The notes under the pieces were generated by a model, which had not been told where the DNA came from, did not search any database, and saw only the letters and a list, made by a program, of their open reading frames with translations. The position numbers and the translations under genes were made by a program. This document shows positions 33,070 to 41,700 of a DNA stretch of 64,000 nt, piece by piece. Within the stretch, counting starts at the first letter, position 1. Every line of letters starts with the position of its first letter. The stretch spans positions 1 through 64,000 of the forward strand of contig JAKMXF010000361.1 of the NCBI GenBank assembly GCA_024704765.1, given 5' to 3'. Origin of the DNA: Oopsacas minuta. Lineage: Eukaryota > Animalia > Porifera.

Positions 33070-34392
33070 ATGGCTACAGCATTATCTGAAGAAATAGAAG
33101 ATCTGTTATATTTGAAGTTGGACAGGGTGGGATATGCTGGATATAAAACTGAATTCTTGCTGAACAGGTTTGATAACGAGATGTGCTGTGTCTCGTGTTT
33201 GGGTTTAGCTCAGATGCCGACTAGAATAACAACTTGTAACCACATAGCTTGTAAATCCTGTCTGGATAATATTCTTAGTTCTAACTTGTCAATATGTCCA
33301 GCTGATAACCGGGAGTTTACAGGTAAACACATACAAGGAGATGCTAACATGGCAAAGCGTATAGGAGAGATTGGTGTGTGTTGTCCTCTTCAAGGGAGAG
33401 GATGTGTGTGGGAGGGTAAACTTAAACTTTGTTACACTCATCTCCTCTCTTGTACTTCCCGTCCTACTATAACAAAAATACGATGTGAACACTGCAATGA
33501 GATGTTCAATAGCATAGAACTAGCTAGACAGCACAAGGATATGTGTCCAGCACTCAAGATACCTTGTCCTAATCAATGTGAATCAGACGTAATAGCCAGG
33601 TCACTTATTCCCCAACATCTGAAAGAGTGTCCTAACTCTGCTATCCATTGCCCATTACAGAATATTGGATGTGATTTTATGTGTATGAGATCTGCTATTG
33701 GTCAGCATATGAGCAATGAGATAGTACGTCACACTACACTAATCGGTATAGCACTGAATAGTTTAATGAAGAATAATGAGACTAGTAATACAGGTTATAA
33801 TACACAGGTTAATGAGAGGATTGCAAGACTTGAAGTGATGGTAGCAGTCAGAGATAAAGATATTTCTTTCTTAAAGACTCAATACAGAGTATTGTCAGAT
33901 AAACTCATAGAATACGAGAATACACCAATCCCAGATTACACGTATAATCCATTCTGTTGGGTAGTAAATGATATTCAGACTAAGAGAGCTAACAACTGTG
34001 AAGTTATGAGTCCCTGTGTGTATTCAGCTCCGGGAGGTTATGCTCTTGTGTTCAAACTTGTTATCAACGGTTTAGGTATGGGACGAGGCACTCACTTATC
34101 TGTAATAACATATCAATGTAAAGGAGTATTTGATTCTAAGCTTAAATGGCCTGTTAAGTTTAAATTCACATTCTCAGTTCTGAATCAATCACAAGATAAG
34201 GATCATATTCAGTTTATGAAACTTTTTAATTTCAGCTCCCCCGTTCTCGCTTCAAATACTACGTCACTTGAACACCTCGTTATTCCTGATTTAGTGTCAT
34301 ATCGAGATATGATGAAGGCTTCTGGAGAGCTATTACACTACATCCTAGATGATAAGATTTCTATACGAATCCTTATTCAATCGTGTGAGTAG
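33070..34392 (+). CDS. TRAF: TNF receptor-associated factor-like (RING, TRAF zinc fingers, coiled coil, MATH), intronless
   Basis: C3HC3D RING (CVSC..CNHIACKSC..CPAD), CPLQGRGC.W.G, CEHC..H..MCP, CPNQC..HLKECP, MATH with SPCVYSAPGGY, THLSV, LKWP..FSVLNQ. Confidence 0.9.
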   Translation: MATALSEEIEDLLYLKLDRVGYAGYKTEFLLNRFDNEMCCVSCLGLAQMPTRITTCNHIACKSCLDNILSSNLSICPADNREFTGKHIQGDANMAKRIGEIGVCCPLQGRGCVWEGKLKLCYTHLLSCTSRPTITKIRCEHCNEMFNSIELARQHKDMCPALKIPCPNQCESDVIARSLIPQHLKECPNSAIHCPLQNIGCDFMCMRSAIGQHMSNEIVRHTTLIGIALNSLMKNNETSNTGYNTQVNERIARLEVMVAVRDKDISFLKTQYRVLSDKLIEYENTPIPDYTYNPFCWVVNDIQTKRANNCEVMSPCVYSAPGGYALVFKLVINGLGMGRGTHLSVITYQCKGVFDSKLKWPVKFKFTFSVLNQSQDKDHIQFMKLFNFSSPVLASNTTSLEHLVIPDLVSYRDMMKASGELLHYILDDKISIRILIQSCE

Positions 34393-36951: not shown

Positions 36952-37248
36952 ATGATCAGTATCCAGTATTTGGGTAGAGTTCTCACTTGTGGAAGACAAT
37001 ATGCTAAAGTAAATGTATCAAAAATGAAACTCAATCCCGACGTTAAGATGCTTTACAAGTGGAGAAGAAAATATTTTACAGTTGACAGTGACAACCAATG
37101 CAAGCCAGGCGATCTAGTGGTTATTCGTAATCTATATAGAAAAGTGGGTAAATGTAACTTCGAACTGGTGAAGGTCATAGAGAGGGCACAGTCTTATGTC
37201 CACCCAATAACGGGAAATGTTACTTACCAAGATAATTTCAAGGATTAG
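36952..37248 (+). CDS. MRPS17: Mitochondrial ribosomal protein S17 (uS17m), intronless
   Basis: GRV..AKV.V.KM.LNP..K..KWRRKYF..D..QCKPGDLVVIR..ELVKVIE...VHPITG matches uS17m. Confidence 0.85.
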   Translation: MISIQYLGRVLTCGRQYAKVNVSKMKLNPDVKMLYKWRRKYFTVDSDNQCKPGDLVVIRNLYRKVGKCNFELVKVIERAQSYVHPITGNVTYQDNFKD

Positions 37249-38548
37249 AATAGTTTAATTATTTAATATATTCTGTGATATTATCATTTAATAAACTGAT
37301 TCAATGATTTTAGTGTGAAAAATATAATTTAATCACTGAGTTTGAAAATGTCAAATTTGGAATCTACCAACTCGATTACACCTGACTAGCAGTTGTAACG
37401 AAATGTCTAGTATGATTGTGAAATATGATTAATCACCAAAAAGGAGTCAAATATTCACTTTGGAAAAAATTCATACCCAAGGTGCAAATCTCCGACCCAA
37501 ATGTGTATGTAGAGAAATTTTCATATTAATCGGATTGCTAGTTTTCGCACGGACGGACGGATGCCATTAGGGCAATTCCCTATAGGAGCTGCAATAAAAT
37601 AATGTATTTATTACATAAAAAGTGCCCGAATTTAAATCGTATCAAGCAAATAGGTTTGTAGGAAATTTATGTATTTAGTCCTGAAAAAAAGCAAAAAATG
37701 TTTTCATCCTTTTAAAAGATACCTTGGTATCAAGATTATAGACGACCCCAAAATTACTATTATCTAGTCCATTCGGAATATGTATGATCAAAGACTCAAA
37801 TGTGAAAGGCTATCAATTTGCTGAATCGTGATGACCCCATGTAACTTAATAAGTTTAAACTTTCAATTCCTGGTATTGAAGGCATGGAAGTGCCAAAACA
37901 CATTACATTATAGATTATAATTTATATACGACGGAAATGGAATTTATATTTCCTCTTTTCAAATTTGAAAATATTAATCAGGCCATGCCGTATAGACAAT
38001 TTTGTGTTTATCATGTTATCCTTGTAAATGAAAATATAAATTGTGTATTATTTGTAATTACTATAGTAACTGTAAATAGATGATTCGCAAAGCAACATAC
38101 ACATGTTAAAACTATGACACGAAAATAATATTTGTATTTAATCCCTCTCCTACCCTCAGTACTCTCAGTGGATACATGAATAACAAATATAATATGTGCT
38201 ATAATATAAGCAAACAGATACTAGGATGTCATATTCACAACATTACTTAGCTCCCTTGTGCAACATAGGTTCCTGTGGACTTTCATTGTTTGTGGAAACA
38301 TGCGTAGGACGAATTCAGGATATTAGATATTACTGATATGTGAGTGCTAAAGTAAAGGAAGAGTGAAACATTTTGCAAATATTCCGCTGTTAGTGGTAAA
38401 AAACAAAATATTGAATTAGGTAGGTTAGATTAAGTAAAATCAATTTGACGTTTCATTAATAATTTAATAACTATGAATCTCATATTTCGCTGAAACTATA
38501 TTTAGAAATTGCTAGAATTATTGATTTCCTAATTGCTAAAACTAAAAG

Positions 38549-39409
38549 TTAAGCTTCTCCGTCTGAAGTAAGAATAAGAGTTCTGTACCCACTGATCTGA
38601 GAGGAGAGAGGTCTTACATATCTCTTGGGGAGATTACGTTCCACAGGATTGATATGTTTTGCCAAATGTTTCTTTAGAGTACATTTGAATTTGAAGAACT
38701 TTATACAATCAGGGTATGTACATTTGTATCTTGATACCCGGTCATGTGCTGTGATTACATGTACTTTAAGATTTCTCTTCCTGGTGTATACTTTAGCACA
38801 ATCTGTGTGAGTACATGCGAATAATGTCCTTGTATCGCTGTGAAGTGGAATGTGCTGTCTAAGATTTGAAATATTGGAAAATTTCATTTTACATTGTATA
38901 CAAATAATCTCAGATTTTATCATTGTTGTGTTATTCTTTCCTTTGTTTGGAAAGTTGGAATCTTCATTATGTTTACTATTTGTATTCATTTCATTCCTAT
39001 TTGTTAATGAATTACTAATTTCTGTTGATTCAGTTATTTTATTGTCATTTACCAAGTTAGTTTTACTATTAGTTATACATTGTAAATTACTTAGTGCTTC
39101 AGTAGAGTTTGTATTTATGTAATTATATTGTTTTCTTGACTTCTCTTTATTCTGACTGTCTGATTGTATCTTGTTGTGATGTGAGAGCCGATGACGTTGT
39201 AAATGGCAGAGTTGAAAGTATCTTTTATTGCAATTACTTTCTGGACAGACAAACGGTCTGATTTTTGCATGAGATAGGATGTGAGTGCGTAGAAGACAAG
39301 GCTTATGGTACTTCTTATTGCAACCCAAGTAAGGACAAAGGAATTTCTTATTAACCTTTCGCTGCTTATCAGAACTTAGCAAAGAATTCGCTACGCTGTC
39401 TTGCTGCAT
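38549..39409 (-). CDS. GTF3A: TFIIIA-like C2H2 protein with only five fingers, intronless
   Basis: Two C-x4-C fingers, a 90-aa N/T/S-rich linker, a C-x2-C finger, two C-x4-C fingers and C-terminal RPLSSQISGY, matching the TFIIIA tail motif RSLASHLSGY. Confidence 0.7.
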   Translation of the reverse strand: MQQDSVANSLLSSDKQRKVNKKFLCPYLGCNKKYHKPCLLRTHILSHAKIRPFVCPESNCNKRYFQLCHLQRHRLSHHNKIQSDSQNKEKSRKQYNYINTNSTEALSNLQCITNSKTNLVNDNKITESTEISNSLTNRNEMNTNSKHNEDSNFPNKGKNNTTMIKSEIICIQCKMKFSNISNLRQHIPLHSDTRTLFACTHTDCAKVYTRKRNLKVHVITAHDRVSRYKCTYPDCIKFFKFKCTLKKHLAKHINPVERNLPKRYVRPLSSQISGYRTLILTSDGEA

Positions 39410-39619
39410 TCAATAACACAGCCAATTTGTAACTAATTACAAAGTTTGTAGACAATGTCAAGTTACAAATGAACCTCAAAACTATTATTATTTCAAACAA
39501 CCAGTGAAACAATCAAATAACTATGATTTCTAAATACAACTTGTAATATACAAATTTATACTTGCTCAGTTGTTCTATTATTTAATAATATTACCTTATA
39601 TAATTAATTTACATGTATA

Positions 39620-41700
39620 ACATAACAATTAAATTGTATAATACAGAGCAATGAGTACATAAGTAAAGTCATAAAGGGTAAGTAGTGAATCCATGTGATT
39701 GATCCTTGTTGTAATGAACTATTAATTTGAGATAACCAGTGTAAGAATTCAGTCTGTAGTATTGAGCTCCTTTAAATATCTCTCCATCGCTCAGTTAATA
39801 CAGTGGAGCAGCTAGCTGTACGTGAAATTTATTCAACCCGTAACATACCATTGATTGCATCCTATGTATCTGAGGATTGATAAAAAATACTAATATTAAT
39901 AATATCAATCTATATTATTAAATCTCAATTGTTGTTTGTTTGTTTGTTTGTCCGTTGTCAAGGAAAGGATTTACTGTATGCAAATTTGAAATTGTAGCAT
40001 AACTATGTATTTTCGTGTTTATCAAGGAAGTAAATAGAATTCAATAAAACTTCACTAAATATATCGAACATGCTGAATCCGATTTTCACACTTTTGGATT
40101 AATCATATGTAAATTTATTGTTGTTTTTATGAATATAAAGTAAACAATTATACAAATCTCAAAATATACGTCGAGCCAAAGGCTTGTATGATTTATAAAA
40201 CGCAAAGCACTAAATAACATATGCTCTCTAATTATGATACATTAGAATTAGAACTCAGGTAGTATAGTATGTGGTGGGATAAGACGTACTTCGGTTAACA
40301 CGTACTAAATATTCTGAACACAAATTAATTAACATATATCAGCATACATTTCTATGTATACTCGGGTAGTATGTACCTGTGCTTTCGAATGGCTAGTATA
40401 CTTTGTCGATTTCCCAGAGTGGTTACGTATTATTCGAGTTCTACTGTATCAATCAGTAGAGTAACTAATACATACACCAATATATTTCTTAATAGTTATC
40501 AACCGTAATATTCATAGAGTAAGCATTGGAAGGGCCAAAGGGGATGATAAAGTCATAGTGTACATATTATCCGTTTTATAATCGTGTCATATTAACGAGA
40601 GTACATGAATCTTAAAAATGAAATCCTATCTAGATGCACTATTGATACTAAATTCTCATATTTCCACCTGACACAATTATCACTGAGATAAGCAAGTTTA
40701 CTTATCTAAACACATCCTTATACCCAATTCTATTCAATATCTCTTGCCATAAAATCCAAAAATTGTGTGTAGCAAACTTATCCATCATTATCAACTAAGT
40801 GTAAACCAATTGAATGAATAATAATAATTTTAACGTGGTTATCTCAATTAGATCCTACTTCAAATATGTCCCCATAATTACACAATTATATATTCAACCC
40901 CACATCCTGTTGTAGTATTTCTTTTAATAATTAATAATCAAATCCATGCGTGCATTTACAACCTTATGGATTCACCAAATCTGTGTGTATAATAGTGTTC
41001 ACCTATACACGGTTAGTTGATTACTTGTACCGATATATTTCTATTAGCAAGTTTATCCAGGGGCATAGAGTGCTTGTTAAGAGTAATATTGAGATTACCT
41101 TAGTACTTAAATTCAGATCCGTATTGTACATATCTTAGTCCAGTTCCTATAGGTTTATAGCTAGGGCAATGCCTTATGGCATGGATGATGCAATGTGCAA
41201 TGTCCATACATCCGCACGATCCTAACAAAACTAACAGTCGATTAATATAAATGGTACATAAGTAAACATGATAGGGTGGAAATTTTCACCTGGGTGTGTA
41301 AAATTTATAGAATGATATTTTACATCCTTTTCTGGATTAATTATTTTCATGAAAACTTAGCTTAATGTCTCACTCTCATAATGTAAATATTGTATTTGCT
41401 GAGTACGTAGTGAGCAAATCCACATCCAAGTTCTTAAGTAATAGTTTAACAAAGCACTCTTGTATTAGAATTGTACCCACTAAAAGTTATTGACTATGGA
41501 TGGACCCTAATTTGTAAAATGATCTGTGCTGAGAATCTAAAGTTTGAATATAATTTCCTTAGTAATTATCCAATATGTCAATTGTCACTTGGGCTTGGTG
41601 TGTATCAATATCACTTTTCTGATGACTTATCTAACTTATTTCAATAGTAAAGCTAATTTTATCTATTCCATATCAGCATTACTTGACACAGTTAATTTTA
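39620..41700 (-). pseudogene. Heavily eroded YWTD/EGF receptor-like remnants
   Basis: Stop-riddled fragments LDKSSEK*Y*YT, HP*SITFS, SMP*GIALA, GCGVEY..CNYG..LVDNDG*VC and LY*LSDG. Splice-like boundaries at 41109 and 41231. Confidence 0.3.

What the first reader, a model, noticed from the sequence alone, without database searches (positions are those of the whole stretch)
38549..39409. TFIIIA-like protein with five fingers: fingers 3-6 replaced by a 90-aa Asn-rich linker
Seen: fingers 1-2 (C-x4-C), then residues ~79-168 (about 38906-39175) of N/T/S-rich sequence with no C2H2 pattern, then a C-x2-C finger and two C-x4-C fingers, and the tail RPLSSQISGY. Established: canonical TFIIIA has nine fingers. 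F1-3 bind box C of the 5S internal control region, F4-6 are the main 5S-rRNA-binding module (7S RNP, feedback control), F7-9 contact box A, and a RSLAS.LSGY-type tail follows F9. The spacing pattern and tail here fit F1, F2, F7, F8, F9. Inference: this factor has lost 5S RNA binding and part of box C recognition, implying a rewired 5S promoter or feedback, or a neofunctionalised paralog.
Basis: partly seen in the sequence, partly recalled or inferred. Interest (0 to 1): 0.75.

Follow-up and report, generated by a model that had tools for sequence, protein, structure and literature searches.

The report
Five-finger TFIIIA of glass sponges
The glass sponge Oopsacas minuta and its relatives carry an expressed, conserved version of TFIIIA, the factor that switches on 5S ribosomal RNA genes, with only five of the usual nine zinc fingers; the four middle fingers, including those that bind 5S RNA, are replaced by a floppy spacer.

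Summary
Window 38549-39409 (minus strand) is one uninterrupted 286-aa ORF. It has two C2H2 fingers, an 89-aa N/S/T-rich stretch without fingers, three more fingers and a conserved tail. The genome is Oopsacas minuta (Hexactinellida).

- **Orthologs:** Five full-length orthologs from other assemblies (51-55% identity in the search table) keep the same 2+3 layout. They lie in the same TRAF / mitochondrial S17 / this-gene block.
- **Conservation:** Finger blocks never change length (dN/dS 0.10-0.17). The spacer varies from 60 to 100 aa (dN/dS 0.65) and is predicted disordered.
- **Family:** Scored module by module, the nearest relatives are named TFIIIA proteins.
- **Finger assignment:** The N-terminal pair fits fingers 1-2 best, and the C-terminal triple fits fingers 7-9 by about 20 bits or more.
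- **Tail:** The tail motif R-x-L-[AS]-S-x-[LI]-S-G-[YF] occurs only in TFIIIA among the 390 proteins fetched. It includes the arginine equivalent to human R319.
- **Finger 6:** Pfam's TFIIIA-specific finger 6 is absent.
- **Expression:** One RNA-like run covers the ORF without any splice joint.

I could not test whether a nine-finger copy exists elsewhere in the genome, or what the 5S promoter looks like. The loss of 5S RNA binding therefore remains an inference.

This is a new variant of a known kind.

The parts
38549..39409 (-). Single-exon coding sequence of the five-finger TFIIIA-like protein (286 aa plus stop).
   Evidence: ORF list. Exact match to a gene call on GCA_024704765.1 JAKMXF010000361.1. 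In-frame stop one codon before the ATG. No joints inside it in four runs.
39269..39343 (-). Finger equivalent to TFIIIA finger 1 (residues 23-47, Cx4C/Hx3H).
   Evidence: Translation. The di-finger HMM F1F2 is the best of eight positions in all six orthologs.
39179..39253 (-). Finger equivalent to TFIIIA finger 2 (residues 53-77), with the H-L-x-R-H helix motif. L, R and the second H are invariant, and the first H nearly invariant, in canonical TFIIIA.
   Evidence: Core-residue score 27.1 against F2, versus 13.5 or less for all other finger classes. Invariant columns in both families.
38909..39175 (-). Finger-free N/S/T/Q-rich spacer (residues 79-167), in the place of fingers 3-6.
   Evidence: Length 60-100 aa and 32% mean identity among orthologs. 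dN/dS 0.65 against 0.10-0.17 for the fingers. AlphaFold pLDDT 21-29. Covered by RNA-like contigs without a joint.
38840..38908 (-). Finger equivalent to TFIIIA finger 7 (residues 168-190). It is the only Cx2C finger, as in canonical animal TFIIIA.
   Evidence: Spacing pattern. The tri-finger HMM F7-9 is best by 9 to 27 bits (about 20 or more in five of six orthologs).
38744..38821 (-). Finger equivalent to TFIIIA finger 8 (residues 197-222, Cx4C/Hx4H).
38654..38728 (-). Finger equivalent to TFIIIA finger 9 (residues 228-252, Cx4C/Hx3H).
38570..38629 (-). C-terminal tail with the TFIIIA activation-region motif (R266-P-L-S-S-Q-I-S-G-Y), followed by the sponge-specific R-T-L-I-L.
   Evidence: The motif R.L[AS]S.[LI]SG[YF] occurs in 6 sponge and 50 TFIIIA proteins and in none of the other fetched zinc-finger proteins. 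It usually lies 13-17 residues after the last finger. Tail identity among orthologs is 73%. R266 aligns with human R319.

Best explanation
**What it is (shown).** This is the glass-sponge descendant of TFIIIA (GTF3A). It is an expressed, intronless gene whose product keeps fingers 1-2, fingers 7-9 and the C-terminal activation motif. Fingers 3-6 have been replaced by, or have decayed into, a fast-evolving, length-variable, disordered spacer of 60-100 residues.

**How it most likely works (inferred).**
- It still nucleates the RNA polymerase III complex on 5S rRNA genes, acting as a two-module factor.
- Fingers 1-2 anchor it on the box C side of the internal control region.
- Fingers 7-9 and the tail sit toward box A and recruit TFIIIC.
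- The flexible spacer bridges the two or so turns of DNA that fingers 3-6 normally cover.
- Because fingers 4-6 are gone, it should no longer bind 5S RNA in the way the classical TFIIIA-5S RNA storage particle does. That chaperoning would be left to ribosomal protein uL18 (L5).
For: **Identity**
- For the C-terminal module, the best non-sponge single-domain hits are all proteins with a TFIIIA-type tail. They include named TFIIIA of Callorhinchus, Ptychodera, Vicugna, Myxine, Anneissia and Strongylocentrotus.
- The profile-profile match to canonical TFIIIA has probability 99.95% and E = 1.2e-38.
- The Cys/His spacing of the five fingers equals that of F1, F2, F7, F8 and F9.
- Sub-HMM tests with two reference sets give F1F2 and F7-9 as the best placements in all six orthologs.
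- The tail motif is specific to TFIIIA within the fetched set.

**A real, constrained gene**
- Six full-length orthologs keep the layout in conserved synteny.
- dN/dS is 0.10-0.17 in the fingers.
- Only 2 SNPs fall in the 861-nt ORF, against 12 SNPs and 2 indels in about 340 nt of flank.
- In run X4, depth is 320-505 over the ORF against 6-32 around it. The neighbouring S17 gene peaks at about 3600, so X4 behaves like RNA. No splice joint lies in the ORF.

**Mechanism, from the literature**
- In yeast, fingers 1 and 7 are essential for complex assembly, and disrupting fingers 4, 5 or 6 has minimal effect (PMC1950542).
- In the yeast cryo-EM structure, TFIIIC is contacted through finger 1, fingers 6-8 and a helix next to finger 9 (PMC10245719).
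- Human R319 substitutions keep DNA binding, RNA binding and localisation but lose 5S transcription (PMC13345412). R319 is the arginine of the motif and is invariant in the sponge proteins.
- A finger that decayed into an 81-aa spacer is already known in hemiascomycete TFIIIA (PMC2566860).
Against: - No 5S gene, no binding data and no genome-wide search were available, so the function is inferred.
- Finger 3, which contributes to high-affinity box C binding, is missing. Human finger 3 and finger 6 variants impair DNA binding, so a five-finger protein may bind a canonical control region weakly.
- The collinear hhalign solution places the N-terminal pair on F4-F5.
- In one more distant assembly, the syntenic gene encodes only the three C-terminal fingers and the tail. 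No N-terminal pair lies within about 20 kb upstream. This would fit a paralog that is being whittled down.
- The kind of run X4 is not on record. Contigs cannot give strand or transcript ends.
Confidence: 0.62

Rival explanations
1. It is a derived paralog. Glass sponges also keep a canonical nine-finger TFIIIA elsewhere, and this five-finger copy has taken on another job, for example regulating a subset of Pol III genes or competing for TFIIIC.
For: - The genome outside this window could not be searched.
- Vertebrates do carry TFIIIA paralogs (gtf3aa/gtf3ab names and 'P43 5S RNA-binding protein-like').
- One assembly has only a three-finger form at the syntenic site.
Against: - A survey of 37 C2H2 families reports a single TFIIIA homolog in fungi, plants and other eukaryotes (PMC3701560).
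- The exhaustive profile search and two alignment-based word searches listed no second glass-sponge TFIIIA-like protein. However, only the best 120-150 hits are listed, and intron-split genes would be fragmented in these gene calls.
- The activation motif and fingers are under strong purifying selection.
Confidence: 0.22
2. It is TFIIIA-derived, but the N-terminal pair descends from fingers 4-5. The protein would then be an N-terminally truncated TFIIIA (F4, F5, decayed F6, F7-F9) that lacks the box C anchor.
For: - hhalign's single collinear alignment maps residues 18-78 onto F4-F5 and the spacer onto F6.
- The inter-finger linker (N-I-K-P-F type) resembles the F4-F5 linker in that alignment.
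Against: - Di-finger HMMs score F1F2 10-19 bits above F4F5 in all six orthologs and in two reference sets.
- Finger B matches F2 far better than F5 (27.1 against 13.5).
- The pair sits 22 residues from a conserved start, as F1 does.
- The N-module's best hits in named TFIIIA lie on F1-F2.
Confidence: 0.1
3. It is not TFIIIA at all. It would be an unrelated C2H2 protein (YY1, ZNF410 or ZXD-like) with chance resemblance, or a mis-read gene whose spacer is an intron.
For: Whole-protein phmmer against PDB gives similar E-values for YY1, ZNF410, TFIIIA and FZF1. Summed scores in the big search are dominated by long poly-zinc-finger proteins.
Against: - Those matches are to generic finger pairs. Only TFIIIA matches collinearly through three fingers plus the tail.
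- The spacer frame is open in six species with in-frame indels.
- The spacer is covered by contigs without joints.
Confidence: 0.04

Closest known systems
Canonical animal TFIIIA (GTF3A), nine fingers plus the C-terminal K-R-S-L-A-S-R-L-S-G-Y region
   Same: Fingers 1, 2, 7, 8 and 9 have the same Cys/His spacing. Finger 2 has the same H-L-x-R-H helix. The same activation-region motif lies 13 residues after the last finger, against 13-17 in most canonical proteins.
   Different: Fingers 3-6 are absent, including Pfam's TFIIIA-specific finger 6 (PF22110) and the 5S RNA-binding fingers 4-6. A 60-100 aa disordered spacer takes their place. The protein ends 11 residues after the motif, with a sponge-specific R-T-L-I-L segment.
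Hemiascomycete (S. cerevisiae) TFIIIA with the 81-residue intervening sequence
   Same: It is a precedent for a TFIIIA finger losing its Cys/His ligands and persisting as a non-finger spacer inside a functional factor (PMC2566860).
   Different: Only one finger decayed there, near the C-terminus, and the yeast spacer carries an essential hydrophobic segment. Here four central fingers are gone, and the spacer shows little conservation beyond a weak N-S-L-T-N patch.
Yeast TFIIIA finger-disruption mutants (Rothfels, Rowland and Segall 2007)
   Same: The experiments show that fingers 1 and 7 are essential for complex assembly, and that fingers 4, 5 or 6 can be disrupted with minimal effect. The sponge protein keeps both essential fingers. 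The three fingers whose disruption had minimal effect are among the four it lacks.
   Different: Those are single broken fingers in the laboratory. Fingers 2 and 3 mattered in yeast unless the protein was overexpressed, whereas the sponge protein keeps finger 2 but lacks finger 3.
Vertebrate p43 5S RNA-binding protein (TFIIIA paralog)
   Same: It is a TFIIIA-derived protein with a specialised subset of TFIIIA's activities. A protein of that name appears among the TFIIIA-profile hits.
   Different: From my own knowledge, not tested here: p43 keeps nine fingers and binds 5S RNA but not the gene. The sponge protein shows the opposite pattern of retention.

Membership tests
TFIIIA (GTF3A) | Nine (fungi: ten) tandem C2H2 fingers | tested here: not met
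   The window protein and five full-length orthologs each have five fingers. There is no C2H2 pattern in residues 79-167.
TFIIIA (GTF3A) | Position-specific finger signatures: all fingers Cx4C except F7 (Cx2C); F3 and F8 with Hx4H | tested here: met
   The retained fingers read Cx4C/H3, Cx4C/H3, Cx2C/H3, Cx4C/H4, Cx4C/H3. This equals F1, F2, F7, F8 and F9 of named TFIIIA.
TFIIIA (GTF3A) | N-terminal fingers homologous to F1-F2 | tested here: met
   F1F2 is the best of eight di-finger HMMs in six orthologs and two reference sets. hhalign preferred F4-F5 in a collinear alignment, so some doubt remains.
TFIIIA (GTF3A) | C-terminal fingers homologous to F7-F9 | tested here: met
   F7-9 is the best of seven tri-finger HMMs, by 9-27 bits (about 20 or more in five of six orthologs). 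The top single-domain hits are named TFIIIA.
TFIIIA (GTF3A) | C-terminal activation-region motif R-x-L-[AS]-S-x-[LI]-S-G-[YF] shortly after the last finger | tested here: met
   It is present and invariant in the six full-length sponge proteins. In the fetched set it is otherwise found only in 50 TFIIIA proteins. It includes the equivalent of human R319.
TFIIIA (GTF3A) | Pfam PF22110 TFIIIA_zf-C2H2 (maps to finger 6) | tested here: not met
   It hits residues 176-207 of Ptychodera TFIIIA and 179-210 of Callorhinchus TFIIIA (finger 6). There is no hit in the window protein or in ortholog P0004.
TFIIIA (GTF3A) | 5S RNA-binding module (fingers 4-6) | tested here: not met
   The module is absent from the sequence. 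RNA binding itself was not assayed.
TFIIIA (GTF3A) | Binds the 5S internal control region and recruits TFIIIC | not testable with these tools
   No 5S gene was found in the window or in the fetched loci.
TFIIIA (GTF3A) | Only TFIIIA-type gene of the genome (orthology rather than paralogy) | not testable with these tools
   Searches listed no second glass-sponge TFIIIA-like protein, but the lists are truncated and the collection holds ORF-level gene calls.
YY1 / ZNF410-type short finger arrays | Contiguous block of four to five fingers without an internal spacer, and no TFIIIA tail | tested here: not met
   Similarity is limited to generic finger pairs. The fingers here are split 2+3, and the tail motif is TFIIIA-specific.

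The most novel reading that the evidence does not exclude
Glass sponges have no nine-finger TFIIIA at all. Their 5S rRNA genes would be switched on by this minimal five-finger factor, a DNA anchor and a TFIIIC-recruiting module joined by a disordered tether. TFIIIA-mediated 5S RNA chaperoning and feedback would then have been lost in a whole animal class, possibly with a changed 5S control region. One lineage may have gone further, to a three-finger form.
Probability: 0.5. Interest if true: 0.72.

Novelty: new variant of a known kind. Interest (0 to 1): 0.62.

Why it matters
TFIIIA is the founding zinc-finger protein. Its nine-finger layout, with its division of labour (fingers 1-3 on box C, 4-6 on 5S RNA and the intermediate element, 7-9 on box A and TFIIIC), is treated as conserved from yeast to humans.

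A naturally occurring five-finger version, kept under purifying selection across the glass-sponge assemblies compared here, is a natural deletion experiment. It suggests which parts are indispensable: fingers 1-2, fingers 7-9, and the R-x-L-A-S-x-L-S-G-Y motif now implicated in human TFIIIA deficiency. It also suggests that the RNA-binding fingers can be lost.

It offers a compact protein for testing how TFIIIA recruits TFIIIC, and whether 5S RNA feedback through TFIIIA is dispensable in an animal.

Tried and rejected
- **Whole-protein searches do not discriminate.** PDB phmmer gives YY1, ZNF410, TFIIIA and FZF1 at similar E-values. The exhaustive profile search ranks long poly-zinc-finger proteins first because scores add up over many fingers. 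I therefore re-scored module by module.
- **Core residues alone** (12+4 positions per finger) assign only fingers A and B clearly. Fingers C-E are ambiguous at that level.
- **A search for a 5S gene failed.** Rfam found nothing in the window or in three orthologous loci. The scan's notes on this genome hold no 5S or other TFIIIA entry.
- **A search for a nine-finger glass-sponge TFIIIA or any named sponge TFIIIA failed.** An invertebrate TFIIIA profile listed none among its 120 best hits. Two ENA proteins with a PF22110 flag (P0148, P0358) proved to be G+C-rich poly-finger proteins unrelated to sponges.
- **The O. minuta genome paper's supplements** do not mention TFIIIA, GTF3A or 5S.
- **The ENA sample accessions of the orthologs** are not cited in any held paper, so their species names remain unknown.
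- **The bacterial promoter/terminator scan** of the 3' flank is irrelevant to a eukaryotic gene.
- **Papers on reduced-finger TFIIIA.** Searches for TFIIIA with reduced finger number or in sponges found no description of such a protein.

Full report
**Observation.** The stretch 38549-39409 is one open reading frame on the minus strand, 286 codons plus a stop.
- Two C2H2 fingers with Cx4C spacing (39269-39343 and 39179-39253).
- An 89-residue stretch without any finger pattern (38909-39175). It is 52% Asn+Ser+Thr+Gln, with one Cys and one His.
- A Cx2C finger (38840-38908).
- A Cx4C/Hx4H finger (38744-38821).
- A Cx4C/Hx3H finger (38654-38728).
- A tail containing R-P-L-S-S-Q-I-S-G-Y (38570-38629).

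Pfam sees only generic C2H2 fingers (E = 1.4e-9). An in-frame stop lies one codon upstream of the ATG, so the protein cannot be extended N-terminally within this exon.

**Source and reality of the gene.** The ORF is an exact gene call on GCA_024704765.1, contig JAKMXF010000361.1. That accession is the Oopsacas minuta (Hexactinellida) genome (PMC10280926).

A word-index search found five full-length relatives of 257-296 aa, at 51-55% identity by BLAST in the search table, all from ENA metagenome assemblies with contigs of 0.4 to 2.5 Mb. It also found fragments. All five have the same 2+3 finger layout and start with M-Q.

The three I fetched lie in the same gene block as in the window. A 98-aa mitochondrial-type S17 gene sits convergent just downstream (window 36952-37248). 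Where the locus reaches far enough, a TRAF/MATH gene lies beyond it (window 33070-34392). They are therefore orthologs from related sponges; their species names could not be recovered.

Conservation differs sharply between the parts:
- The finger blocks never change length (56 and 85 residues) and are 68-72% identical on average.
- The tail is 73% identical.
- The spacer ranges from 60 to 100 residues and is 32% identical.

Between the two closest orthologs, dN/dS is 0.10 (N-terminal fingers), 0.17 (C-terminal fingers), 0.41 (tail) and 0.65 (spacer). All spacer indels are in frame. AlphaFold2 on the six-sequence alignment models the fingers at pLDDT 62-81, the spacer at 21-29 and the tail at about 32. 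That pattern fits two folded modules joined by a disordered tether, plus a linear motif at the end.

**Expression and splicing.** Four public runs of one sample hold the stretch. All are kept as contigs and their kind is not on record. Three have even depth (55-105) and behave like DNA. The fourth, X4, has these depths:
- About 3600 over the S17 gene.
- 320-505 over 38504-39434, which is the ORF plus a few tens of bases.
- 32 in the 3' intergenic stretch.
- 111 upstream.
- About 6 beyond 40156.

That pattern follows the gene structure and is what RNA would give. The genome project did deposit RNA-seq under the same BioProject. No run shows a joint inside the ORF, so the spacer is not spliced out.

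The other individual's alleles differ from the window by 12 SNPs and 2 indels in about 340 nt of 3' flank. They differ by only 2 SNPs in the 861-nt ORF: one synonymous and one A221V. Contigs cannot give strand or transcript ends, so this is supportive evidence, not proof.

**What family it belongs to.** Whole-protein comparisons do not discriminate. PDB phmmer lists YY1, ZNF410, TFIIIA and FZF1 at similar E-values. The exhaustive profile search of 1.84 billion representatives is headed by long poly-finger proteins, whose many fingers add up.

Scored module by module, the picture is clear:
- With a profile of the three C-terminal fingers plus tail, the eleven best non-sponge single-domain hits all carry a tail of the L-A-S-R-L-S-G-Y type.
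- Those with names are TFIIIA of Callorhinchus, Ptychodera, Vicugna, Myxine, Anneissia and Strongylocentrotus. Further hits are TFIIIA of Mactra, Haliotis, Nymphon and Schizosaccharomyces japonicus.
- The profile of the N-terminal pair finds its best matches at the F1-F2 position of such proteins.
- Profile-profile comparison with twelve canonical TFIIIA proteins gives probability 99.95% and E = 1.2e-38. It aligns the C-terminal half residue by residue with F7, F8, F9 and the tail.

**Which fingers are kept.** Named animal TFIIIA proteins share a position-specific pattern. All fingers are Cx4C except F7 (Cx2C), F3 and F8 have Hx4H, and the tail follows F9. The sponge pattern equals F1, F2, F7, F8, F9.

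I built HMMs for every pair and triple of neighbouring fingers from 15 canonical proteins:
- The sponge N-terminal pair scores best on F1F2 (59-66 bits), against 48-55 for F4F5 and less for the rest.
- The C-terminal triple, without the tail, scores best on F7-9 (78-94 bits), against 59-74 for the runner-up in the same ortholog.

An independent set of 18 non-redundant deuterostome TFIIIA proteins gives the same order. F1F2 (48-59) is ahead of F2F3 (41-58) and F4F5 (38-41), and F7-9 (70-86) is ahead of every other triple (at most 59). Finger B alone matches F2 far better than any other class, and it shares the H-L-x-R-H helix that is conserved in both families.

The one dissenting result is hhalign's single collinear alignment. 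It puts the N-terminal pair on F4-F5 and the spacer on F6. That solution needs the smaller gap, and I rate it a minor rival.

**The tail.** It occurs in none of the other zinc-finger proteins. It begins 13 residues after the last finger in the sponge proteins and mostly 13-17 residues after it in the TFIIIA proteins.

Numbering checked on the 365-aa orangutan protein shows that human R319 is the arginine of K-R-S-L-A-S-R-L-S-G-Y. A 2026 preprint reports R319P/Q/W as a recurrent cause of human TFIIIA deficiency. These variants keep DNA binding, RNA binding and nuclear localisation but lose 5S transcription, and the authors suggest a defect in assembly of the polymerase III machinery (PMC13345412). 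The equivalent sponge residue, R266, is invariant. So the part of TFIIIA that activates transcription is retained.

**What is missing.** Pfam's only TFIIIA-specific model, PF22110, maps to finger 6 of canonical proteins. It does not hit the sponge proteins. Fingers 4-6 are the established 5S RNA-binding module, and they contact the intermediate promoter element (statements quoted in PMC2566860, and PMC13345412). Finger 3 contributes to box C binding. All four are absent.

**Most likely mechanism (inference).** Three lines from the literature bear on this:
- In yeast, fingers 1 and 7 are essential for assembling an active complex. Disruption of fingers 4, 5 or 6 has minimal effect, and defects in fingers 2 or 3 can be overcome by higher expression (PMC1950542).
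- The yeast TFIIIA-TFIIIC-DNA structure shows TFIIIC contacted through finger 1, fingers 6-8 and a helix next to finger 9 (PMC10245719).
- Hemiascomycete TFIIIA already shows one finger decayed into an 81-residue spacer (PMC2566860).

The sponge protein keeps both fingers that are essential in yeast, finger 2, the rest of the C-terminal triple and the activation motif. It has lost fingers 4-6, which are individually dispensable in yeast, and finger 3. I therefore think it still acts as the 5S gene-specific initiation factor, working as a bipartite protein. Fingers 1-2 would sit on the box C side, and fingers 7-9 plus the tail toward box A and TFIIIC. A disordered chain of 60-100 residues is easily long enough to span the intervening DNA. 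It should have lost canonical 5S RNA binding.

The steps that are shown are the architecture, homology, conservation, selection and probable expression. The steps that are inferred are DNA binding, TFIIIC recruitment and loss of RNA binding.

**What could not be settled.**
- I could not search the rest of the O. minuta genome for a nine-finger TFIIIA or for 5S genes. Rfam found nothing in the window or in three orthologous loci. The scan's notes on this genome hold no 5S entry and no other TFIIIA entry. The genome paper's supplements do not mention them.
- A survey of C2H2 families reports TFIIIA as single-copy in most eukaryotes (PMC3701560). None of the searches listed a second glass-sponge TFIIIA-like protein. 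However, the lists are truncated, and intron-split genes would be fragmented in these collections.
- In a more distant assembly (ERZ20067936), the syntenic gene encodes only 152 residues: the three C-terminal fingers and the tail. No N-terminal finger pair lies within about 20 kb upstream. This is unexplained, and it keeps the paralog reading alive.

**Novelty and verdict.** Literature searches for TFIIIA with reduced finger number, or for sponge TFIIIA, found no description of such a protein. The protein fails two formal family criteria (nine fingers and the PF22110 finger 6). It meets the position-specific signatures, the F1-F2 and F7-F9 homology tests and the activation motif.

I classify it as a new variant of a known kind: a TFIIIA that has lost its four central fingers. 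It would interest specialists in polymerase III transcription and zinc fingers as a natural minimal TFIIIA. The functional claims remain to be tested.

Noticed in passing
L004/L005/L007 (ENA ERZ20067936, contig ptg000986l); gene at L005:10001-10459: At the site syntenic with the window gene (S17 gene convergent downstream), the only ORF is 152 aa: a short basic N-terminus, the three C-terminal fingers and the tail R-P-L-A-S-Q-I-T-G-Y. No N-terminal finger pair lies within about 20 kb upstream. It could be a three-finger form, a split gene, a very large intron or an assembly problem.
   Followed up: partly
window 40013-40147: This stretch of about 135 nt has summed contig depth of 1e5 to 4.6e5 in all four runs, against 55-105 for neighbouring DNA, with loose ends on both sides. 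It matches no Rfam family and has no second full copy in the window. It looks like a very high-copy short dispersed repeat of the O. minuta genome.
   Followed up: partly
window 36952-37248 (+) and 33070-34392 (+): A 98-aa Ribosomal_S17-domain gene (mitochondrial S17-like; depth about 3600 in the RNA-like run X4) and a 440-aa RING/TRAF/MATH gene lie here. The order TRAF, S17, five-finger gene is also seen in L003. In L002 and L006, S17 is kept but a family C GPCR gene (ANF_receptor + 7tm_3) follows.
   Followed up: partly
proteins P0275 and P0121 (Branchiostoma lanceolatum): The GTF3A model P0275 carries a near-exact duplicate of the finger 1-2 pair (residues 8-62 and 71-125). The 989-aa model named 'zinc finger protein 420-like' contains a TFIIIA-like C-terminal module at 300-420. 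These are either tandem TFIIIA-like copies or fused gene models in amphioxus.
   Followed up: no
window 38086-38424 versus 38549-39409: Runs X2-X4 carry a second haplotype or individual. It has 12 SNPs and 2 indels (one of 12 nt at 38330) in the 3' flank, but only two SNPs in the ORF (38660 synonymous; 38748 A221V).
   Followed up: yes
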